From IMG/VR virus record IMGVR_UViG_3300042566_001512, positions 62,001-126,000 of that record: DNA of 64,000 nucleotides; one strand, written 5' to 3'. The notes beneath the pieces were generated by a model, which saw nothing but the letters and a program-made list of their open reading frames with translations, had not been told where the DNA came from and did no database searches. Position 1 is the first letter of the stretch. Each line of letters opens with the position of its first letter. Shown here in pieces: positions 2,466 through 27,408 of this stretch. The position numbers and the translations under genes were made by a program.

Positions 2466-4109
2466 ATGCCTAATATTAGTTTACCACTAGAGGACCTACA
2501 AGACAGCGTAGAAAGGCCCGTTATCTTTTCAGTAGTTAGAGAATTGCTGGAAATAACTGAAATATCCGACAAAACAAACATTTCTTTTTACGACGACGAA
2601 GGTAAATCTGCACAGGTGGGCTCTCTATTAAACGACACTCCGAATAAAACAAACAAATGGCCATTTGACGAAAGGGTCAGAATAGAGGTACAGGAAGACT
2701 TTGACGAAGATTACGCATACAGAATACACACCAAAAAAGCAGAGCACATACCTGTGTTTAAGGACGAGGAACTGGGTGTAATAATAAGACCTATATATTC
2801 TCCTACTAAAGTAAATATAAATTTTACATACAGAGCCAGAGATAGGAATCAGGCAGTTAACTGGAGAAACAATATACGGGCAAAATCGGCAATGTTTAGA
2901 AATATAAATTTGCACGAAATAAGCTATCACTCTCACCTTCAGGAAGAGTTTATAATAATAGTAAAAGAACTGCACCGACTCAGAGAAAATATTGCAGGGT
3001 ACGGAGAAAGCTTTGATACTTACTTTGCCAGCCATTTAAGCGATAAGGCCAGCGTAAAGACTAACCTAGGTGGCAAATCTGTGTTATGGGGCGTAGACGA
3101 GAGACAGATAAGAGTACAGGGGCTGTTTGATTTTGCTGCTGCGCCAGAGAAGGGGGAGAAGAGCGATTCGGCAGATTCCTGGTCGATTTCCTTTTCTTAC
3201 AAATTTGAGTATCAAAAACCTATACTAATGAACATGGTCTACCCCATAGTGGTGCATAACCAGGTATTAAGCAGTAAATTCAGGCCCACCGAAAAGGTTT
3301 ACAGGTTAGAAGATCAAAATAGATCTTTTAGCATGTCCAACAGAGCATATAACGCTTTTGAGTCGGATACCTCTGTACTAACATACAAAGGAAACGACGG
3401 TATATCTATACCTTCTTTTGATGAGTTTGCACCAAAGACTATACTGCCCAGCACAGTAAACGTCATGACGTGCCTAGTAGTGATCGACACGTCAGAAACT
3501 GGCAATCCTAGAAAGCTAATGAATCTAGGTCAGCTAGGAGAAGTTAACTTAAACGGTACCATTCTTGATTTTATAAAGAGATCAGAATATCCTTTCTTGG
3601 GCAAAGATTTTTATTCCATATTCAGTCTATCTCTGTACCGACATGGGGCTCTTTGCGATACCGGCAGCCTTATGGTGGACGAGAACCTTGACATTTATAG
3701 CAATTTGGATTTAGATCTTAGAAGAACTTATAGAATTCGACTGGGATTAGTTACTAATTTTACTTATCTTAGAAAAGAGGCTCTGGATCGAATACGAGCA
3801 TTCAGTGCTACTGCGCCCAGCCTTGGTGATATATTAATAAACTGCATAGATGGCTGCATAGGAAAATACGCCAACCATCCGGACATCGGAAAGGCGGCAA
3901 TGAGTGACGTGGATAGAAAACTTGTATTGGCCAGCCCTATTGCCCAATACGACAGTAGATCAGACAGTACTTTGCCGGGGTATTTACCTAACCTAAAGCT
4001 GCCTGGCAGGAGTACACCTTCCGGACAAATACCCACCTACTACGGTAGAGGAGCAGTCATGTCTAACGTGCAATCCATGTTCGTTAGAGCTAATAGAAAA
4101 GGACATTGA
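2466..4109 (+). CDS. phiKZ-like virion structural protein
   Basis: 547-aa ORF in the structural block; resembles conserved jumbo-phage virion proteins by recollection only. Confidence 0.5.
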   Translation: MPNISLPLEDLQDSVERPVIFSVVRELLEITEISDKTNISFYDDEGKSAQVGSLLNDTPNKTNKWPFDERVRIEVQEDFDEDYAYRIHTKKAEHIPVFKDEELGVIIRPIYSPTKVNINFTYRARDRNQAVNWRNNIRAKSAMFRNINLHEISYHSHLQEEFIIIVKELHRLRENIAGYGESFDTYFASHLSDKASVKTNLGGKSVLWGVDERQIRVQGLFDFAAAPEKGEKSDSADSWSISFSYKFEYQKPILMNMVYPIVVHNQVLSSKFRPTEKVYRLEDQNRSFSMSNRAYNAFESDTSVLTYKGNDGISIPSFDEFAPKTILPSTVNVMTCLVVIDTSETGNPRKLMNLGQLGEVNLNGTILDFIKRSEYPFLGKDFYSIFSLSLYRHGALCDTGSLMVDENLDIYSNLDLDLRRTYRIRLGLVTNFTYLRKEALDRIRAFSATAPSLGDILINCIDGCIGKYANHPDIGKAAMSDVDRKLVLASPIAQYDSRSDSTLPGYLPNLKLPGRSTPSGQIPTYYGRGAVMSNVQSMFVRANRKGH

Positions 4110-9767: not shown

Positions 9768-10664
9768 ATGAACGAAATAGCCTTTATATCTTATTTTGGA
9801 TTAGCGTTTTTAATTGTTTTTGTTTACCTTAAATCAAGGTGGGATAAAAAACAAGAAAACGAAAATAAAAAACTAAAAAATATTCACAGTACTACTTCTG
9901 GCCTGCTGACTCTAAACAAAGATTACTTTGAGGAAGACGGGTTAGTAAAGTTTGACATAGCCTCAATTACTGAGAGTGAAATATTTAATAAAGTAATATT
10001 GAAAAATTTAGATAAAGAATGGGAAGTAGAGCAGAAAAAGCTTTTGCACGACCACGTGATGAACATGCAATACTACGGCATGGCTGATCTATTTAAAATT
10101 TCTGAGCATTTGAGAAAATACAAAGATCAAACTGGACAAACGGTTTTGCTATATAAGTCTATCATAACCGCTTGCGCTGTGGTATACGACTTTATGATAC
10201 CAAAATCATTAATGAACGCTGACTCACTGGCCCTGCTTTATGTAGCTGCATATTTTCGTGCAAATTCTACCACGTGCGTTTATGAAGAGATTCAAAAACA
10301 CATTAAAAGTAACTTAAAAGAAAAACGATTAGATAACGTTGCAAAAGAGCATGCGCAATTAAAAGCTTTGCTGTTGGATATGGATTTTGCAAATGTATTT
10401 TTTCAAGAGATATTTAAACACAAATCTTATTTAGGTTTGGAGTACCTGCATAAAAAATGGATAAATAGTAATCTGGTTTGTAAAGATAACTTAGACCTTT
10501 ACAAAAATGACATTTCTTGTTTTAAAAAATTACTGACGATTTATTTCGGTATATTGCAAATTCATATACCTGCTAGCTACCTGTACATCGACACTTCGGT
10601 TTGCGAGTACTTACTTCAAATAAAAAGATATGATTTAAATAAACCACACATACGCGCAGTATAA
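9768..10664 (+). CDS. Hypothetical protein with N-terminal TM helix
   Basis: 298-aa ORF with a hydrophobic N-terminus followed by a basic stretch. Confidence 0.6.
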   Translation: MNEIAFISYFGLAFLIVFVYLKSRWDKKQENENKKLKNIHSTTSGLLTLNKDYFEEDGLVKFDIASITESEIFNKVILKNLDKEWEVEQKKLLHDHVMNMQYYGMADLFKISEHLRKYKDQTGQTVLLYKSIITACAVVYDFMIPKSLMNADSLALLYVAAYFRANSTTCVYEEIQKHIKSNLKEKRLDNVAKEHAQLKALLLDMDFANVFFQEIFKHKSYLGLEYLHKKWINSNLVCKDNLDLYKNDISCFKKLLTIYFGILQIHIPASYLYIDTSVCEYLLQIKRYDLNKPHIRAV

Positions 10665-22476: not shown

Positions 22477-22552
22477 GGGACGTTAGCTCAGCGGTTAGAG
22501 CAGAGGACTCATAATCCTTTGGTCAGGTGTTCAAATCACCTACGTCCCACCA
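22477..22552 (+). tRNA. trnI-CAU: tRNA with CAU anticodon, most likely tRNA-Ile2 (Met not excluded)
   Basis: Full 76-nt cloverleaf GGGACGT...ACGTCCC-A-CCA with GAGGA-CTCATAA-TCCTT; D and anticodon arms resemble E. coli ileX; TilS gene nearby. Confidence 0.93.
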
Positions 22553-23344: not shown

Positions 23345-23980
23345 ATGTCAAAAATTCATTTCCTGAGCAAACCCAACAAAGAAATCTATCTTGCGTTCTC
23401 CGGTGGCGTAGACTCGGTTGTTCTGCTACATACACTAATTCGTAGAAATTACAGTGTAGCACTACTTACCGTCGACCACGGTAATGAATTTGCTAAACAA
23501 GAAGTAGAGTTTTGTAAGAAGACCGCAAAGGAATTGGGATTAGAGTACAAGATATTTACTATTCCTGATTTTGATAAATCCACGTCACTTGAGGCGTTTT
23601 GGTCGAATCACAGGAACGACATTTTCCAAAAAATGGACAAGATGGTCGTGAGCGGGCATCATCTGAACGACGCCTGTGAATGGTACCTGATGTCCACTTT
23701 TCAAGGTACGCCAAAGCTTCTAGAGCACACCAACAGGAACGTGCACCGACCAATGATTACCAATACAAAGAAAGTCATCATTGAGTATGCTAATAAATAC
23801 AACTTGACGTACCTGACTGACCCCACTAACGCAGATACTACTTACAATCTAAGAAACAAAGTAAGAGCCGAGCTAATGGGAAGTGTAAAGAGTTGTTTTC
23901 CTGGTATTGAAACTACCGTGAAGAGACTCATCGTTAGAAAATATTTAAATAAAATGAAGTCGGTAGAAAATAGCATTTAA
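23345..23980 (+). CDS. tilS: Minimal tRNA(Ile)-lysidine synthetase (PP-loop domain only)
   Basis: AFSGGVDS PP-loop, VDHG, GHHLND, HRPM, YLTDPTN and RNKVR; 211 aa. Confidence 0.88.
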   Translation: MSKIHFLSKPNKEIYLAFSGGVDSVVLLHTLIRRNYSVALLTVDHGNEFAKQEVEFCKKTAKELGLEYKIFTIPDFDKSTSLEAFWSNHRNDIFQKMDKMVVSGHHLNDACEWYLMSTFQGTPKLLEHTNRNVHRPMITNTKKVIIEYANKYNLTYLTDPTNADTTYNLRNKVRAELMGSVKSCFPGIETTVKRLIVRKYLNKMKSVENSI

Positions 23981-24004
23981 TTTAAATACTATTTTCTTTA
24001 GGAC

Positions 24005-24562
24005 TCGGTGTTGAGGTAAAAAATATCTAGTTCAACATTGTTATGCGAGATAGTAAACGCAGGCACTGTCGTAATAACAGATCACAATAAATGCTCACCA
24101 ATAAAGCGCGGTTAAGTAAGTCACAAGCGAGCTTTATAACCATTACTACGTGTAATCGATTGTATTGCATGAGCGCTTTTTGGATCGTGGACAAATACTG
24201 TTGTGACTATGAAGACGGCATCCCATTTTTAATGGGGCAGCAAGTAATAGTGGAAAATTGTGGAAGTGCTGTCAAAAAACAGTATATAGGGCAACCAATC
24301 CCAGTCCCCGGGTTTAACCGTGCTTTAAAATAAAAAGCTAACTGGGGAACAGCTTGCTGTGTGAATTCTCCTAAAATTGATATGCTAAAAACGTATCAAG
24401 CCAAATACAAAGCAATTTGTAGAGGTAGTGAAATACAATAGGAGAGACCCATCTATACGTAACTAAGATCGGGTTGTAAGTATTTCAAGTCATGCTAGCA
24501 TGACTGTCCCTCTAGTGATAGAGGGTATCCTAATACATATTTAGAAAAGTATGTATTAGGAT
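24005..24562 (+). ncRNA. Candidate structured ncRNA A (~560 nt)
   Basis: Dense nested stems, two probable pseudoknots and a GCAA tetraloop, between tilS and the tRNA-Leu 5' half. Strand is inferred from context. Confidence 0.5.
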
Positions 24563-24569
24563 GCTTTGT

Positions 24570-24598
24570 GCGGGGGTGGTGAAATTGGTAGACACAAC
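24570..24598 (+). pseudogene. 5' half of an interrupted tRNA-Leu (acceptor strand plus D arm)
   Basis: GCGGGGG-TG-GTG-AAATTGGTAGA-CAC-A-AC; pairs 7/7 with the acceptor strand at 25618-25624. Confidence 0.85.
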
Positions 24599-24674
24599 CT
24601 CACTATTTCTTTTTCTATTTGATTTCAATCGCTTATCACTATAATGGTAGTATAAAATAGTGATTGGAGTTAAT

Positions 24675-25226
24675 ATGAAAAATGAATTACAAGAGAAGTG
24701 TAGTGTAAACGATAATGTTGCTTTAGATAAGAAAACTCTTCTGGGGTTATATCCAGAATACACATCTGTTCTTGGTCCCTACTTTAGACCGGACGGAAGA
24801 CAACACGTTATTTTAAATAATGCTAAAGCACCTAAAGGCACTAAAGATAAAACAAAAACTATATCTTACCCTAAGGCACTTAAAGAAGTTGAGTTAAAAG
24901 AAAAATTAAAACCTGATGAAACTGTAGATCATCATGATAGAGATTTTACTAATGACAAATTAAGTAATCTTAAGGTAAAATCTAAATCAATTCACGCGTC
25001 GCAGGATGCGCTTAGAGTTACTGTAAAGCCTATTAATTGTCCAGAATGTTCAAACCTTTTTACGCCTAACGTAAATCAAAGAAACAAACAACATGCCGGT
25101 AAAGGACAAGCTGGTCCTTTTTGTAGTAAAGTGTGTGTCGGTAAATACGGCGCAAGAGTACGAAATGAAGGCGTTATCTTAGAGAGAACGTCATTAGAAA
25201 AAACATATTATCGCATAGATAAGTAA
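24675..25226 (+). CDS. Free-standing HNH homing endonuclease with C-terminal Zn finger
   Basis: ETVDHHDRDFTNDKLSNL...H; CPEC...FCSKVC; GGAG RBS; lower GC. Confidence 0.85.
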   Translation: MKNELQEKCSVNDNVALDKKTLLGLYPEYTSVLGPYFRPDGRQHVILNNAKAPKGTKDKTKTISYPKALKEVELKEKLKPDETVDHHDRDFTNDKLSNLKVKSKSIHASQDALRVTVKPINCPECSNLFTPNVNQRNKQHAGKGQAGPFCSKVCVGKYGARVRNEGVILERTSLEKTYYRIDK

Positions 25227-25234
25227 TAAGCTAT

Positions 25235-25552
25235 CCGACTGTGACGGAACTGGTATACGTAGCAGACTTTGACTAATTTGAGTGCCTTTGAGGAAACTCT
25301 TAGAGTAGAACGCTTCAAATTCGGTGGAACTCCTACTTAACTTATGTTAAGGGACAATACCGAGCCAAGCTTTAGTTGTTAATAAACAACTATCGAAGGT
25401 GTAGAGACTAGACGGGGCGAACCTAATACAAAAGTAATGGTTAAGGTATAGTCCAGACTACAACATTTTTAAAATGGCTTAGGTAACTAAGAGTAGTAAG
25501 AAAATCTGCCGAAGGAAACTTCATGTGGGTTCAAATCCCACCAGTCGGACCA
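25235..25552 (+). tRNA. trnL-UAA: tRNA-Leu(UAA), 87 nt mature, with a group I intron (exons 25235-25269 and 25501-25552)
   Basis: CCGACTG/CAGTCGG-A-CCA acceptor; spliced arm GCAGA-CTT|AAAA-TCTGC; GAAG-GAAA-CTTC variable arm. Confidence 0.93.
25270..25500 (+). mobile_element. Group I intron (tRNA-Leu type, 231 nt, no ORF)
   Basis: P AAATTCGGTGGAA (25317), Q AATACCGAGCC (25356), R GTAGAGACTAGACG (25401), S AAGGTATAGTCC (25443); IGS TTTGAG; terminal G; insertion at U^AA. Confidence 0.92.
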
Positions 25553-25573
25553 ATATATTAAGAAAACAAAACA

Positions 25574-25628
25574 TAAAATCTGTCGGAGAGCAATCTCCAT
25601 ACGGGTTCGATCCCCGTTCCCCGCACCA
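25574..25628 (+). pseudogene. 3' half of the interrupted tRNA-Leu(UAA)
   Basis: TAA-AA-TCTGT, GGAGA-GCAA-TCTCC arm, ACGGG-TTCGATC-CCCGT, TCCCCGC-A-CCA. Confidence 0.88.
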
Positions 25629-25712
25629 TTTAAAAAATCTGATTTTAATTTATTTCAATTATATATTCTAAATGTGAGTAATAACTACTCAAGTTTTAAA
25701 AGGAAACACAAA

Positions 25713-26147
25713 ATGTCTTTCAATGCAAATGTCCTTGTGCAACTCGCTGGTGCTGAGATCAATGACGAATACAGCAGCAATCTCAACAGCATGCCCGTGG
25801 AACTCAAGCAAGCTCTGCAAGAACAACGTGAAGCTGAACGCAAAGCACTGTACGCTGAAGCCGCAAAACTCATCATGGGTATCTTCAAGCGCACCGAAGA
25901 AAAGATTGCCCAAGAAGTGCAAGAGATCCGTGAGGCTCGTCAGCGTGAAGCTAAGGCCAAGGCGCGGATTGCGGATATTGAGCGTGCCAAGCAGTACGCT
26001 GAAGAAACCAACAACTATTTGCCACTGGCTCTGTTGTGCGGAACCATGGTCATCCCTTCCGGAACTGTGAATCGTGAAAAGTTCAGTGTCCCGGTGGAAT
26101 GGAAACCCAAGTCCGAATCGGTCAAAAAAACGCCAGCTAAGAAGTAA
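25713..26147 (+). CDS. Coiled-coil hypothetical protein (144 aa)
   Basis: AAGGA RBS, GC-rich codons, E/R/K-rich helix and basic tail; promoter-like motif at 25660. Confidence 0.8.
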   Translation: MSFNANVLVQLAGAEINDEYSSNLNSMPVELKQALQEQREAERKALYAEAAKLIMGIFKRTEEKIAQEVQEIREARQREAKAKARIADIERAKQYAEETNNYLPLALLCGTMVIPSGTVNREKFSVPVEWKPKSESVKKTPAKK

Positions 26148-27325
26148 GTAGTAGCTAGGTCCAGTCTCGTGAAGGCCGAGACCGATGACGGTGCATAATC
26201 GTCATCGCGACGCTTTAAAACTACTTTGTCAAGGCACTAGCGCCTTTTGATTTATTCAAAAAGCTAGCTTTCATCAATTACATTCTTTAAGAGGTAATTG
26301 ATGGTGGTGTATCATGGATCTGCCAATCAAACCGCTTTTTATTTAGAACGATTTAGAATCATTTAAATTATTACTTTACTTAAATGGTTCTATATATTAC
26401 AATACGTTCCAAAATAATCAGTGGTGCGTAGAACATGCAACACCACGTGAGTAACTGGACTCAAACCAAACTCAGTAAAACTTTCTCTGTAATAGTCCTC
26501 AGGATAGCTGCGAGACAACGAATCCGGCTCTCAGGGGTCGGTGGAGTCACTCTTGAGATAGCAGCGATGAAAAGGAGAAAGTAAAAAAGGCTATATGTGA
26601 AACATCGCCGTGGCACGTATAGATAAACTACACAAGCGGTATAGAAATATACAGCAGCCGGATGCTCCGGTATGGTCAATGTGTAGAATTTGAATCGCCC
26701 TTGTGACGAGTAATCAAATTAATGGCCTATAACTCATAAGCTGCGTTGGTGGTGTAGATGGTATCGTACGCGAAGCTTCTATTGAGTTCAATTCCCTTTC
26801 GTGAGAAAGGGTACCTTTAAATACATTTACCCTAGTGTATTTAAAAGTATTTCAAGAACACACGGCAACACCATGTCGTTAGCTTACACAAACCTCTTAT
26901 GAGTTAGGTGAATGCGGTGCGTCGTAGACCTATACCTAGCCCCAAAACGCTTTTAAACGTCACAAGGTAACGACCTAGGCGGTGGACTTTGATTAAAGCG
27001 AGTATATCAGAGTTTACCGGGTATTAAATGGTGCTCGTCATCAGTTGCAATGACTCAAGCTGTTTTAACTAAAAATAGCTTGGAATAGATTGCAGGTGGA
27101 GAGTCTTTCCCAAGAGACTCATAGAAGCCCAGTGATGCCAACTTAAAGTGTTAAGTTCTAACCTCGCAAACTGATCTGTGGTTATTAAATCAAAAAGGCA
27201 AGCTATTGCCTCGATCAGTAAATAGAAGTAAGTAGCGCTGCTTGCCTGATAAAAATCTTTCTCTAGACTTGGTTGTGCTTGTCGAGTGTTGAGGTTTTTA
27301 TTGGAGAGGTAGTTCCTTTAAACTA
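26148..27325 (+). ncRNA. Candidate large ornate ncRNA B (0.9-1.2 kb)
   Basis: No credible ORF; many stems, GNRA loops and perfect 10-bp long-range helices; TATATTAC at 26393; ends just before tRNA-Arg. Confidence 0.6.
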
Positions 27326-27331
27326 ATAAAT

Positions 27332-27408
27332 CTGTCTGTAGCTCAACTGGATAGAGCAGCTGCCTTCTAAGCAGCAGGTCGGGGGTTCGAGTCCCTCCAG
27401 ACAGGCCA
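27332..27408 (+). tRNA. trnR-UCU: tRNA-Arg(UCU)
   Basis: CTGTCTG/CAGACAG-G-CCA; GCTGC-CTTCTAA-GCAGC; TTCGAGT. Confidence 0.96.

What the first reader, a model, noticed from the sequence alone, without database searches (positions are those of the whole stretch)
24005..24562. Candidate structured ncRNA A (~560 nt) with probable pseudoknots
Seen stems: ATAAAGC/GCTTTAT (24101/24131), ATACTGTT/AACAGTAT (24195/24278) enclosing GACGGCAT/GTGCTGTC (24214/24266), CCCAGT/ACTGGG, TCTCCTA/TAGGAGA (24367/24439) enclosing TTGATATG/CGTATCAA and TACAAA-GCAA-TTTGTA, AGTCATG/CATGACT, CCCTCT/AGAGGG, and a terminal 14-bp stem (24527/24549). Crossing pairs: AGTCACAA/TTGTGACT (24119/24201) and CAGCAAG/CTTGCTG (24238/24353). 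Known: large phage RNAs such as ROOL and GOLLD sit beside tRNA genes. I cannot match it to a named family.
Basis: partly seen in the sequence, partly recalled or inferred. Interest (0 to 1): 0.68.

Follow-up and report, generated by a model that had tools for sequence, protein, structure and literature searches.

The report
Exon-less group I-like phage RNA
The flagged 560 bases encode a real, conserved, highly folded RNA of an uncultured jumbo phage. It has the fold of a self-splicing group I intron and is related to such introns, yet it sits between genes with no exons to join, so it may be a ribozyme fold reused for another job.

Summary
The structured RNA is real. It lies on the + strand at about 24006-24562 and folds far better than shuffles (z -6.5). 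Homologues occur in three other lineages of uncultured phiKZ-like jumbo phages, and two more distant elements share its architecture. Compensatory changes support the helices.

It is not ROOL- or GOLLD-like. Its 3' half has the group I intron core: P3-P4-P6-P7-P3'-P8-P7'-P9, with the P3/P7 pseudoknot and the junction motifs AAAUU, AGCCAA and AGGU. Its 5' domain is homologous to a genuine group I intron in a tRNA-Arg gene of a related phage. A model built only from genuine introns of this phage clade detects three of the elements, but not the window's copy. Rfam detects none.

No host gene is interrupted. The RNA lies between the stop codon of a TilS-like gene and tRNA-Leu. It has no conserved terminal G, no U.G splice-site pair, no P5, and an all-A-U P7 at the aligned G-binding position. 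The core nevertheless evolves more slowly than synonymous sites.

My best reading is a free-standing, group I-derived RNA kept for its fold. An intergenic self-splicing intron, or an orphaned relic, remain possible. No RNA data exist.

The parts
24006..24562 (+). RNA-A as a whole: a group I-like structured RNA with a 5' peripheral domain, a core and a 3' two-hairpin module
   Evidence: MFE z -6.52. Homologues: L003-L006 (nhmmer E 2e-100), L017 (2e-16, full length) and L007/L008. Similarity to L003 starts near 24030, and sequence shared with other phages resumes at 24565.
24006..24040 (+). 5' hairpin in the position of P1 (10 bp, CGGUGUUGAG/UUCAACAUUG). It has no U.G pair with the U on the 5' strand.
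   Evidence: MFE helix list. An extended hairpin of different sequence stands at the same place in L003, L017 and L007 (read).
24067..24220 (+). Long-range helix closing the first peripheral sub-domain (24067-24072 with 24215-24220). It holds the conserved block AGGCACUGUCG.
   Evidence: 24068-24219 changes G-C to A-U in L003. The equivalent helix is UACCG/CGGUA in L017, L007 and the L007 tRNA-Arg intron.
24082..24206 (+). Helix UCACAAUA/UGUUGUGA.
   Evidence: Two compensatory pairs against L003: 24083-24205 and 24087-24201.
24110..24141 (+). Hairpin GGUUA/UAACC whose loop (GUAAG...GCGA) is conserved in all four lineages
   Evidence: The stem covaries: GGUUAU/AUAACC, GGGUAU/AUAUCC, GAGUAU/AUACUU (alignments).
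24237..24360 (+). Helix GCAGCAAGU/GCUUGCUGU closing the second peripheral sub-domain, immediately before J2/3
   Evidence: MFE. A helix at the same position is CAAUCC/GGAUUG in L017, CAACCC/GGGUUG in L007 and CAACG/CGUUG in the tRNA-Arg intron.
24305..24348 (+). Helix UCCCCGG/CUGGGGA with an inner hairpin at 24322-24338
   Evidence: Compensatory pairs 24307-24346 (C-G to G-C) and 24325-24335.
24361..24366 (+). J2/3 motif GUGAAU
   Evidence: Invariant in all four lineages and in the L007 tRNA-Arg intron.
24367..24445 (+). P3 (24367-24373 with 24439-24445), followed by J3/4 AAAUU
   Evidence: 7/7 pairs, three of them with changes on both sides. Five different sequence versions in six lineages all pair.
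24377..24399 (+). P4 hairpin closed by a 7-nt loop. There is no P5 and no J4/5.
   Evidence: GAUAUG/CGUAUC here, against CUACC/GGUAG, CAAUAAA/UUUAUUG, CGGUA/UACCG and CCAGAG/CUCUGG elsewhere. Only L017 and L101 carry a P5-sized insert.
24400..24426 (+). AAGCCAAA junction and P6 (GCC/GGU plus UACAAA-GCAA-UUUGUA), then J6/7 UAGUG
   Evidence: The same AGCCAA ... AGGU frame occurs in genuine introns.
24430..24486 (+). P7 (GAAAUAC with GUAUUUC), which forms a pseudoknot with P3
   Evidence: Covaries as AAAUAC/GUAUUU, AGCUAC/GUAGCU and GACUAC/GUAGUC. Three pairs change on both sides.
24446..24475 (+). P8 (GACCC AUCU ... AGAU C GGGUU), followed by J8/7 GUAAG
   Evidence: The closing pair is G.U, G-C or A-U in different lineages.
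24488..24505 (+). P9 hairpin
   Evidence: Three pairs with changes on both sides.
24508..24562 (+). 3' module: a 7-bp hairpin with a GNRA loop (P9a), then UA, then a 13-16-bp A/U-rich hairpin (P9b)
   Evidence: 89-98% identical among lineages whose four-fold sites are saturated. The same module, with covarying stems, occurs in RNA-B (window 26794) and at L100:7692, L101:5808, L019:2127 and L016:6864.
23345..23980 (+). Upstream neighbour: a 211-aa PP-loop (TilS-like) gene. Its stop codon lies 25 nt before the RNA.
   Evidence: Pfam PF01171, E 2e-27. Full-length homologues are 200-258 aa.
24568..24596 (+). Downstream neighbour: the 5' fragment of the resident tRNA-Leu(UAA) gene
   Evidence: In run X2 a contig with identical flanks joins 24596 to 25599 through 32 nt, giving an intact intron-less tRNA. 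L003 has an intact tRNA-Leu 7 nt after its RNA.

Best explanation
RNA-A is a free-standing structured RNA of about 540-560 nt. It descends from the group I introns that live in the tRNA genes of this clade of phiKZ-like jumbo phages.

Shown:
- It folds into the group I core (P3-P9 with the P3/P7 pseudoknot).
- It carries an enlarged 5' peripheral domain and a conserved two-hairpin 3' module.
- The helices are kept by compensatory substitutions.
- The core changes more slowly than synonymous sites.
- It interrupts no gene and is not coding.

Inferred:
- It is transcribed with the TilS-like gene and tRNA-Leu. No sigma-70 promoter or terminator is seen, although the phage's own RNA polymerase signals are unknown.
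- It is set free as a discrete RNA. Its 3' end would be made at or just after the module, by RNase P cutting at the tRNA that follows or by termination at the U-rich tails seen in some relatives.
- It no longer works as a splicing intron. It would be retained for its fold, as a scaffold or decoy for a factor of the tRNA/translation island, or as a ribozyme with altered chemistry.

The window's copy is the most derived from the group I consensus.
For: Structure:
- z -6.52 on the + strand against -3.22 on the - strand.
- 97.3% paired cells and 9 doubly changed pairs, against 0-2 in slid controls.
- 9 compensatory pairs against L003 on the window's MFE, compared with 1-3 in slid controls.

Group I nature:
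- Six lineages show the same order of helices with different sequences.
- The 5' domain, J2/3 and the 5' strand of P3 are homologous to the L007 tRNA-Arg intron (E 1.7e-22 and 8.6e-11). That intron scores 49.1 bits against Rfam Intron_gpI.
- Model R2, built only from genuine introns, finds the L007, L017 and L101 elements over its full length and in the expected register, at 30.4, 25.7 and 25.3 bits (E 6e-4 to 7e-3 in 465 kb).

Not an intron in a gene:
- It lies between the stop codon of a full-length TilS-like gene and the first base of a tRNA.
- The base after P9b is G, A, G, G, G, A in the six lineages, and L003 has no spare G before its tRNA.
- The 5' hairpins contain no 5'-U.G pair.
- P5 is absent in 4 of 6 lineages.

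Selection:
- Between the window and L003, the core differs by 6% against 22% at four-fold sites. P9a-P9b is 89-98% identical where four-fold sites are saturated.

Not coding:
- The 80-aa ORF is absent from the homologues.
Against: - No RNA data exist, so transcription, the RNA's ends and the absence of splicing are all untested.
- Rfam does not recognise any copy. R2 does not recognise the window, L003 or L100 copies even with filters off. For the window itself the group I assignment therefore rests on homology to L017/L007 and on helix topology.
- Only four to six lineages are available, so the covariation statistics are modest.
- The 5' domain differs by about 30% between the window and L003. 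That is no slower than neutral, so part of the RNA may be unconstrained.
- L007 and L101 keep a canonical GACUA/UAGUC P7, so catalysis may survive in some members.
- The window has a G-C pair at the top of P7 that could still bind guanosine.
Confidence: 0.55

Rival explanations
1. It is still a self-splicing (or at least self-cleaving) group I intron that sits in an untranslated, intergenic part of the TilS-tRNA-Leu transcript. It would excise itself either selfishly or to regulate the downstream tRNA. This would resemble the group I ribozyme in a 5' UTR of Clostridioides difficile (my own knowledge: Lee et al. 2010, Science).
For: The core fold is conserved with covariation. L007 and L101 keep the canonical GACUA/UAGUC P7, and the L007, L017 and L101 elements score with the intron-only model R2. 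A G follows P9b in 4 of 6 lineages. A P1-like hairpin stands at the 5' end. The RNA's similarity tree disagrees with the TilS tree, as expected of a mobile element.
Against: No terminal G is conserved: L003 and L101 have A, and L003 has no other G before its tRNA. No 5'-U.G pair is found in any of the four 5' hairpins. P5/J4-5 is missing in most copies. At the aligned G-binding position the window's P7 pair is A-U. No homing endonuclease gene lies inside, and no intron-less allele with joined flanks was seen in DNA contigs.
Confidence: 0.25
2. It is an orphaned intron. Homing-endonuclease-driven replacement of tRNA genes, of the kind seen right next door, would have left behind an intron whose exons were later deleted. 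It would now have no function and be decaying.
For: The adjacent 1-kb HNH plus intron-bearing tRNA-Leu cassette shows that such rearrangements are happening, and it is polymorphic between strains. L007 also has a tRNA-Leu 5' fragment after its RNA. The window's copy has lost several intron hallmarks. The 5' domain evolves at about the neutral rate. The RNA is absent from several related phages (L009, L011, L012, L013).
Against: The helices are kept by compensatory changes in lineages whose synonymous sites are saturated. The core is 94% identical where four-fold sites are 78% identical, and the 3' module is nearly invariant. The same architecture persists in six lineages.
Confidence: 0.13
3. 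It is a large ornate RNA of a class unrelated to group I introns (ROOL/GOLLD-like).
For: Its size is about 560 nt, it lies beside tRNA genes in a phage, and it has no Rfam match.
Against: No ROOL or GOLLD hit at E <= 10. The element-by-element correspondence to group I introns, and the homology to one, explain the fold.
Confidence: 0.03
4. It encodes the 80-aa protein of ORF 24091-24333, or it is a DNA-level signal.
For: An open frame of 80 codons exists in the window.
Against: Pfam finds nothing. The longest + strand frames in the homologues are 41, 50 and 32 aa, at other places. Substitutions are compensatory in RNA helices, and G.U pairs favour the + strand.
Confidence: 0.01

Closest known systems
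Group I introns in bacterial and phage tRNA anticodon loops (for example tRNA-Leu(UAA) introns; Rfam RF00028). This includes the window's own intron at 25235-25552 and the tRNA-Arg intron at L007:10360-10832.
   Same: The order of helices is P3-P4-P6-P7-P3'-P8-P7'-P9 with the P3/P7 pseudoknot. It shares J3/4 AAAUU, the AGCCAA...AGGU frame around P6 and a GUGAAU J2/3. There is direct sequence homology of the P2-type domain and the 5' strand of P3 with the L007 intron.
   Different: There are no exons and no host gene. There is no conserved terminal G and no U.G at a 5' splice site. P5/J4-5 is missing. P7 is all A-U at the aligned G-binding position in the window. The 5' domain is about 350 nt, and a conserved two-hairpin 3' module is present. 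It scores below detection for Rfam and, for the window's copy, for a clade-specific model.
GIR1 lariat-capping ribozyme (Rfam RF01807). Its description here is from my own knowledge.
   Same: It is a precedent for a group I-derived fold that no longer splices and has taken on another reaction.
   Different: GIR1 lives inside twin-ribozyme introns of eukaryotic rDNA, has its own junction architecture and keeps a reactive terminal G. No score was obtained here.
The allosteric group I ribozyme behind a c-di-GMP-II riboswitch in Clostridioides difficile (my own knowledge).
   Same: It is a group I ribozyme placed in an untranslated region rather than inside a coding, tRNA or rRNA gene.
   Different: That ribozyme is a complete, active intron with defined splice sites and a riboswitch partner. 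Neither feature is seen here.
ROOL and GOLLD large ornate RNAs (PMC12286853; Rfam)
   Same: They are several hundred nucleotides long, highly structured, and found in phages or prophages near tRNA genes.
   Different: No sequence or structure match. RNA-A has a group I core.

Membership tests
Group I intron (RF00028) | Core of paired regions P3-P4-P6 and P7-P3'-P8 with the P3/P7 pseudoknot, in that order | tested here: met
   Helices located in six lineages. P3, P7 and P9 each have three pairs changed on both sides, and 97.3% of cells pair.
Group I intron (RF00028) | Score at or above Rfam's gathering threshold (50 bits) | tested here: not met
   No RF00028 match at E <= 10 for the window, L007, L017 or L101 copies, even in searches of 281-1151 nt. 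The genuine introns nearby score 49-86 bits.
Group I intron (RF00028) | Detectable by a covariance model built only from genuine introns of the same phage clade (R2) | tested here: inconclusive
   The L007, L017 and L101 elements are found at 30.4, 25.7 and 25.3 bits, E 6e-4 to 7e-3, over the full model length. The window, L003 and L100 copies are not found with filters off.
Group I intron (RF00028) | Sequence homology to a confirmed member | tested here: met
   The L007 tRNA-Arg intron (Rfam 49.1 bits) matches the L017 and L007 RNA-A at E 1.7e-22 and 8.6e-11 over about 110-120 nt. The window's RNA-A matches the L017 RNA-A over its full length at E 2e-16.
Group I intron (RF00028) | Guanosine-binding G-C pair in P7 | tested here: inconclusive
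   Canonical GACUA/UAGUC in L007 and L101. At the aligned position the pair is A-U in the window, L003 and L017. The window has a G-C pair one step higher in a 7-bp P7.
Group I intron (RF00028) | Conserved terminal G at the 3' splice site | tested here: not met
   The base after P9b is G (window, L017, L007, L100) or A (L003, L101). In L003 no G lies between P9b and the first base of the tRNA.
Group I intron (RF00028) | P1 with a U.G pair at the 5' splice site | tested here: not met
   The 5' hairpins of the four RNA-A copies have no wobble pair with U on the 5' strand. This was tested by inspection only.
Group I intron (RF00028) | P5 with J4/5 and J5/4 | tested here: not met
   In the window, L003, L007 and L100 the P4 helix is closed by a 3-7-nt loop. 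Only L017 and L101 have a P5-sized insert.
Group I intron (RF00028) | Interrupts a gene whose exons give a functional product when joined | tested here: not met
   The RNA lies between the stop codon of a full-length TilS-like gene and a tRNA start. It has other flanks in L017, L007, L100 and L101.
Group I intron (RF00028) | Self-splicing activity | not testable with these tools
   No RNA runs hold the sequence. An in-vitro assay is needed.
ROOL / GOLLD | Match to the Rfam covariance models | tested here: not met
   No match at E <= 10.

The most novel reading that the evidence does not exclude
Jumbo phages of this clade have taken the group I intron fold out of its intron context and use it as a stand-alone RNA in their tRNA islands. 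Under this reading, RNA-A and its larger relatives in L100 and L101 end in a shared two-hairpin module. The L100 element also carries a block that resembles the ribosomal L1 stalk. These RNAs would act in trans, as ribozymes with a new substrate or as decoys or scaffolds for host tRNA and translation factors.
Probability: 0.3. Interest if true: 0.85.

Novelty: new variant of a known kind. Interest (0 to 1): 0.6.

Why it matters
Group I ribozymes are known almost only as introns. GIR1 is the textbook case of the fold being reused for something else. A conserved family of exon-less group I-like RNAs would be a second natural example of a ribozyme fold leaving its original job, and one with living intermediates. 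Related phages carry genuine tRNA introns with the same peripheral domain, copies that still look catalytic (L007, L101), and derived copies such as the window's.

The finding also shows that standard Rfam screening misses these RNAs. In addition, the tRNA islands of uncultured jumbo phages turn out to be dense with ribozymes: group I introns, a twister-sister, a hammerhead-like motif and two large structured RNAs within 4 kb.

If the RNA proves to be only an intergenic intron or a relic, it is an ordinary though poorly annotated element.

Tried and rejected
- **Rfam**, at gathering and at E <= 10, on the window and on L007, L017 and L101: nothing for the RNA itself.
- **BLAST against 50,697 phage records**, near and distant modes: no match. 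The major capsid protein is at most 40% identical to any cultured phage.
- **IMG/VR scans** with three neighbouring proteins and three DNA patterns: no relatives. A generalised pattern for the 3' module gave only chance hits without stem complementarity.
- **Metagenome scans.** The DNA-pattern scan found nothing. A scan with the TilS alignment gave 80 loci but no new RNA-A by nhmmer.
- **Model R1**, built from the RNA-A core, found only the four RNA-A copies. It did not link them to canonical introns. Building the canonical model instead (R2) worked for three lineages.
- **Eight further TilS contexts** (L009, L011, L012, L013, L016, L098, L099, L101): no RNA-A by nhmmer. L101 and L100 turned out to hold more distant elements.
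- **Expression.** No public RNA run holds the stretch. Laying DNA contigs gave natural variants and the cassette polymorphism, but nothing on transcripts.
- **Sigma-70 promoter and intrinsic terminator scan** of 23800-24750: none. This says little for a phage with its own RNA polymerases.
- **Coding reading** of ORF 24091-24333: rejected.
- **RNA-A as the ribozyme that makes the tRNA's 5' end** by hydrolysis after a terminal G: rejected. The base before the tRNA is U, U, C or G in different lineages.
- **Literature searches** found no description of exon-less group I-like RNAs in jumbo phages.

Full report
**Setting.** The window is bases 62001-126000 of a 208.8-kb IMG/VR virus record, estimated 76% complete. 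It encodes a 731-aa major head protein of the phiKZ type (phrog_3231, E 7e-173). The nearest cultured phages are only 28-40% identical in that protein. It is therefore an uncultured jumbo phage distantly related to phiKZ-like phages. DNA contigs place it in lake and freshwater metagenomes, and partial relatives occur in wastewater and hydrocarbon metagenomes. The flagged stretch lies in a translation island. In order along the + strand this holds:
- tRNA-Met(CAU), 22477-22552
- a 211-aa PP-loop/TilS-like gene, 23345-23980
- the candidate RNA
- a tRNA-Leu locus
- a 157-aa ORF
- a twister-sister-like element
- a second long non-coding stretch
- tRNA-Arg(UCU), 27332-27408

As RNA, 24005-24562 folds to -164.2 kcal/mol, against -126.4 +/- 5.8 for dinucleotide shuffles (z -6.52). 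The opposite strand reaches only z -3.22, as expected if G.U pairs matter.

The 80-codon frame at 24091-24333 has no Pfam match. It is not kept in any homologue: the longest + strand frames there are 41, 50 and 32 aa, at other positions. Coding is therefore excluded.

**Homologues.** Nothing similar exists in 50,697 phage records or in IMG/VR. I found relatives through the neighbouring TilS-like protein. The word search gave a graded series from 92% identity downwards, and I fetched their contigs.
- L003-L006 (TilS 92%) carry an 81%-identical RNA.
- L017 (TilS 65%) carries a full-length diverged copy (nhmmer E 2e-16).
- L007/L008 (TilS 86%) carry a copy whose 3' part is recognisable with the window alone and whose whole length is recognisable with a profile.
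- Other relatives (L009, L011, L012, L013) lack it.

**Structure from comparison.** I aligned the 3' 210 nt of the four lineages and named six helices. Of all cells, 97.3% pair, and nine pairs change on both sides: three each in P3, P7 and P9. No shuffle out of 500 reached these values, and sliding the partners by 1-3 columns gave 0-2 such pairs.

Over the whole RNA, the window's MFE structure shows 9 compensatory pairs against L003, compared with 1-3 for slid controls. Broken pairs number 19 against 27-41.

- TTGTGACT pairs with 24082-24089, not with AGTCACAA at 24119.
- The block at 24067-24072 pairs with 24215-24220.
- 24266-24272/24279-24285 is a local hairpin.
- CAGCAAG/CTTGCTG is a nested closing helix.

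The one true pseudoknot is P7 (24430-24436/24480-24486) crossing P3 (24367-24373/24439-24445).

**What it is.** Read 5' to 3', the 3' half has these elements:
- J2/3 GUGAAU
- P3 5' strand
- J3/4 AAAUU
- a P4 hairpin
- AAGCCAAA
- P6 with a GNRA loop
- AGGUAGUG
- P7 5' strand
- AA
- P3 3' strand
- P8
- GUAAG
- P7 3' strand
- P9

This is the group I intron core. The same junction words appear in the Rfam consensus and in the genuine introns next door. Three lines of evidence make this more than a resemblance.

First, a profile of the four RNAs hits a second place in L007, at 10431-10565 (E 2.5e-18). That place lies inside an intron splitting tRNA-Arg(UCU) after CUU. The intron scores 49.1 bits (E 1.7e-11) for Rfam Intron_gpI. 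It matches the L017 and L007 RNAs at E 1.7e-22 and 8.6e-11 over the peripheral domain, J2/3 and the 5' strand of P3.

Second, I built a covariance model (R2) from four genuine introns only: the window's tRNA-Leu intron, the L007 tRNA-Arg intron, L007:3438 and the L098 tRNA intron. In 465 kb it found every other genuine intron. It then found the RNA-A copies of L007 (30.4 bits, E 6e-4) and L017 (25.7 bits, E 6e-3), and an element in L101 (25.3 bits, E 7e-3). All three cover the full model length in the register I had drawn by hand.

Third, two more distant elements, L101:5375-5862 and L100:7307-7747, repeat the same helix order with different paired sequences. The topology therefore holds in six lineages.

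Against membership, Rfam finds none of the copies. R2 does not find the window, L003 or L100 copies even without filters. For the window's own copy, the assignment rests on its full-length homology to L017/L007 and on the helix topology.

**Why it does not look like a working intron.**
- It interrupts nothing. Upstream, 25 nt away, is the stop codon of a TilS-like gene that is full length compared with some 80 homologues. Downstream, 5 nt away, a tRNA-Leu begins.
- In L003 an intact, intron-less tRNA-Leu starts 7 nt after the RNA.
- In L017 the RNA starts at the stop codon of an unrelated 236-aa ORF. In L007 it follows a hammerhead-like motif and some 270 nt of other sequence.
- In L100 a relative ends 14 nt before tRNA-Arg, and in L101 about 45 nt before an ORF.
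- The base after the last hairpin is G in four lineages and A in two. L003 has no other G before its tRNA.
- None of the four 5' hairpins has a U.G pair with U on the 5' strand.
- P5 with J4/5 is replaced by a short loop in four of six lineages.
- The P7 pair that aligns with the guanosine-binding G-C is A-U in the window, L003 and L017. It is canonical only in L007 and L101. The window does have a G-C pair one step higher, so I score this feature as inconclusive.
- No DNA contig shows an allele with the RNA precisely missing.

**Is it under selection?** Between the window and L003, four-fold degenerate sites of the TilS-like gene differ by 22%. The core from J2/3 to P9 differs by 6% and the 5' domain by about 30%, indels included. 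Against L007 and L017, four-fold sites are saturated (56-57% different), yet P9a-P9b stays 89-91% identical. The core and the 3' module are therefore constrained. Much of the 5' domain is not, apart from a few blocks conserved in all lineages (AGGCACUNYCG, and the GUAAG...GCGA hairpin). The RNA's similarities group (window, L003) with (L017, L007). The TilS-like protein groups the window, L003 and L007 against L017. This suggests that the RNA has been exchanged between lineages (an inference from identities, not from a tested tree).

**The 3' module.** This is the 7-bp hairpin with a GNRA loop, then UA, then a 13-16-bp A/U-rich hairpin. It is nearly invariant among the four RNA-A copies. With covarying stems it recurs:
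- in the middle of the second long non-coding stretch (window 26794, with homologues at L003:8589, L007:9780, L017:5161 and L016:6864)
- at the ends of the L100 and L101 elements
- after a shorter RNA in L019

It is often followed by U-rich sequence. I read it as a shared 3'-end or protein-binding module. That reading is inference. A generalised pattern found no true copies in IMG/VR.

**Most likely mechanism.** The structure, the homology, the lack of a host gene and the pattern of constraint are shown. From there I infer three things. The RNA is made as part of the TilS-tRNA transcript; no sigma-70 signals are present, and the phage's polymerase signals are unknown. It is released as a discrete RNA whose 3' end is set at the module or by RNase P at the following tRNA. 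It is kept for its fold rather than for splicing. I put this at 0.55.

The rivals are:
- a still-active intron in an untranslated region (0.25), favoured by the canonical cores of L007 and L101
- a functionless orphan left by homing-endonuclease-driven tRNA gene replacement (0.13), favoured by what is visibly happening next door but disfavoured by the compensatory changes
- an unrelated ornate RNA class, or a coding or DNA-level element (together under 0.05)

**Limits.** There are no RNA runs. Only four to six lineages are available. E-values from my models are rough because calibration was shortened. P1, the terminal G and the G-binding site were judged by inspection. I did not resolve the full fold of the 5' domain.

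Noticed in passing
window 24568-25628: A resident tRNA-Leu(UAA) gene is split into a 5' fragment (24568-24596) and a 3' fragment (25599-25628) by a cassette of about 1 kb. The cassette carries an HNH endonuclease ORF (24660-25226) and a complete second tRNA-Leu(UAA) with a 231-nt group I intron (25235-25552; Rfam 51.3 bits). A freshwater contig with otherwise identical sequence has the intact intron-less tRNA instead, so the cassette is a strain-level polymorphism. This amounts to replacement of a tRNA gene by a homing element that brings its own intron-protected copy. L007 shows a similar tRNA-Leu 5' fragment followed by ORFs and a fresh tRNA-Leu.
   Followed up: partly
window 26147-26227: A twister-sister-like ribozyme starts in the stop codon of the 157-aa ORF at 25674-26147. 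It scores 31.7 bits, just under Rfam's 34. Its homologue at L003:7940-8021 scores 42.1 bits, above threshold. L016 and L019 show the same ORF-then-ribozyme arrangement.
   Followed up: partly
window 26230-27331: A second long non-coding stretch ('RNA-B') runs up to tRNA-Arg(UCU). It contains a segment matching the L1-stalk region of bacterial 23S rRNA (26480-26582; 42 bits, E 1.6e-10, model positions 2120-2221). It also contains a copy of the two-hairpin module at 26794-26850. It is conserved in L003, L007, L017 and L016. The L1-stalk-like block also matches part of the group I-like element of L100 (nhmmer E 3.5e-5). It may mimic a binding site for ribosomal protein L1. I did not test whether its 5' half is also group I-like.
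   Followed up: partly
L007:6782-6857: A hammerhead-like motif (CUGAUGA, stem II, CGAAAC, closed stem III, open stem I) lies between the TilS-like gene and that phage's RNA-A. The Rfam matches are weak (RAGATH-1 hammerhead 26.4 bits, E 0.067; Hammerhead_3 20.2 bits). If active, it would cut about 270 nt upstream of the RNA.
   Followed up: partly
L100:6780-7765 and L101:5100-5880: These are larger relatives (about 780-1000 nt) of the group I-like RNA, homologous to each other at both ends (E 5e-15 and 5e-8). L101 keeps a canonical GACUA/UAGUC P7 and has a long insert in P8. L100 has P7 as AAGUCU/AGACUU and ends 14 nt before tRNA-Arg. Each is preceded by a small ORF ending in a similar ...EKPRPP... 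stretch.
   Followed up: partly
L007:10326-10858: tRNA-Arg(UCU) is interrupted after CUU by a 456-nt group I intron (Rfam 49.1 bits). The window's tRNA-Arg (27332-27408) has no intron. ARAGORN mislabels the split gene as tRNA-Ser.
   Followed up: yes
window 22477-22552 and 23345-23980: A short (211-aa) TilS-like PP-loop protein, without the usual C-terminal domains, is encoded 0.8 kb from a tRNA with a CAU anticodon. That tRNA may be a lysidine-modified tRNA-Ile rather than tRNA-Met.
   Followed up: no
L003:4339-4461, L011:2557-2751 and 3022-3202, L021:1648-1917, L098:4262-4395: Further genuine group I introns occur in related phage contigs (R2 scores 44-128 bits), several of them next to HNH genes or inside tRNA genes. 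This phage clade is unusually rich in introns.
   Followed up: no
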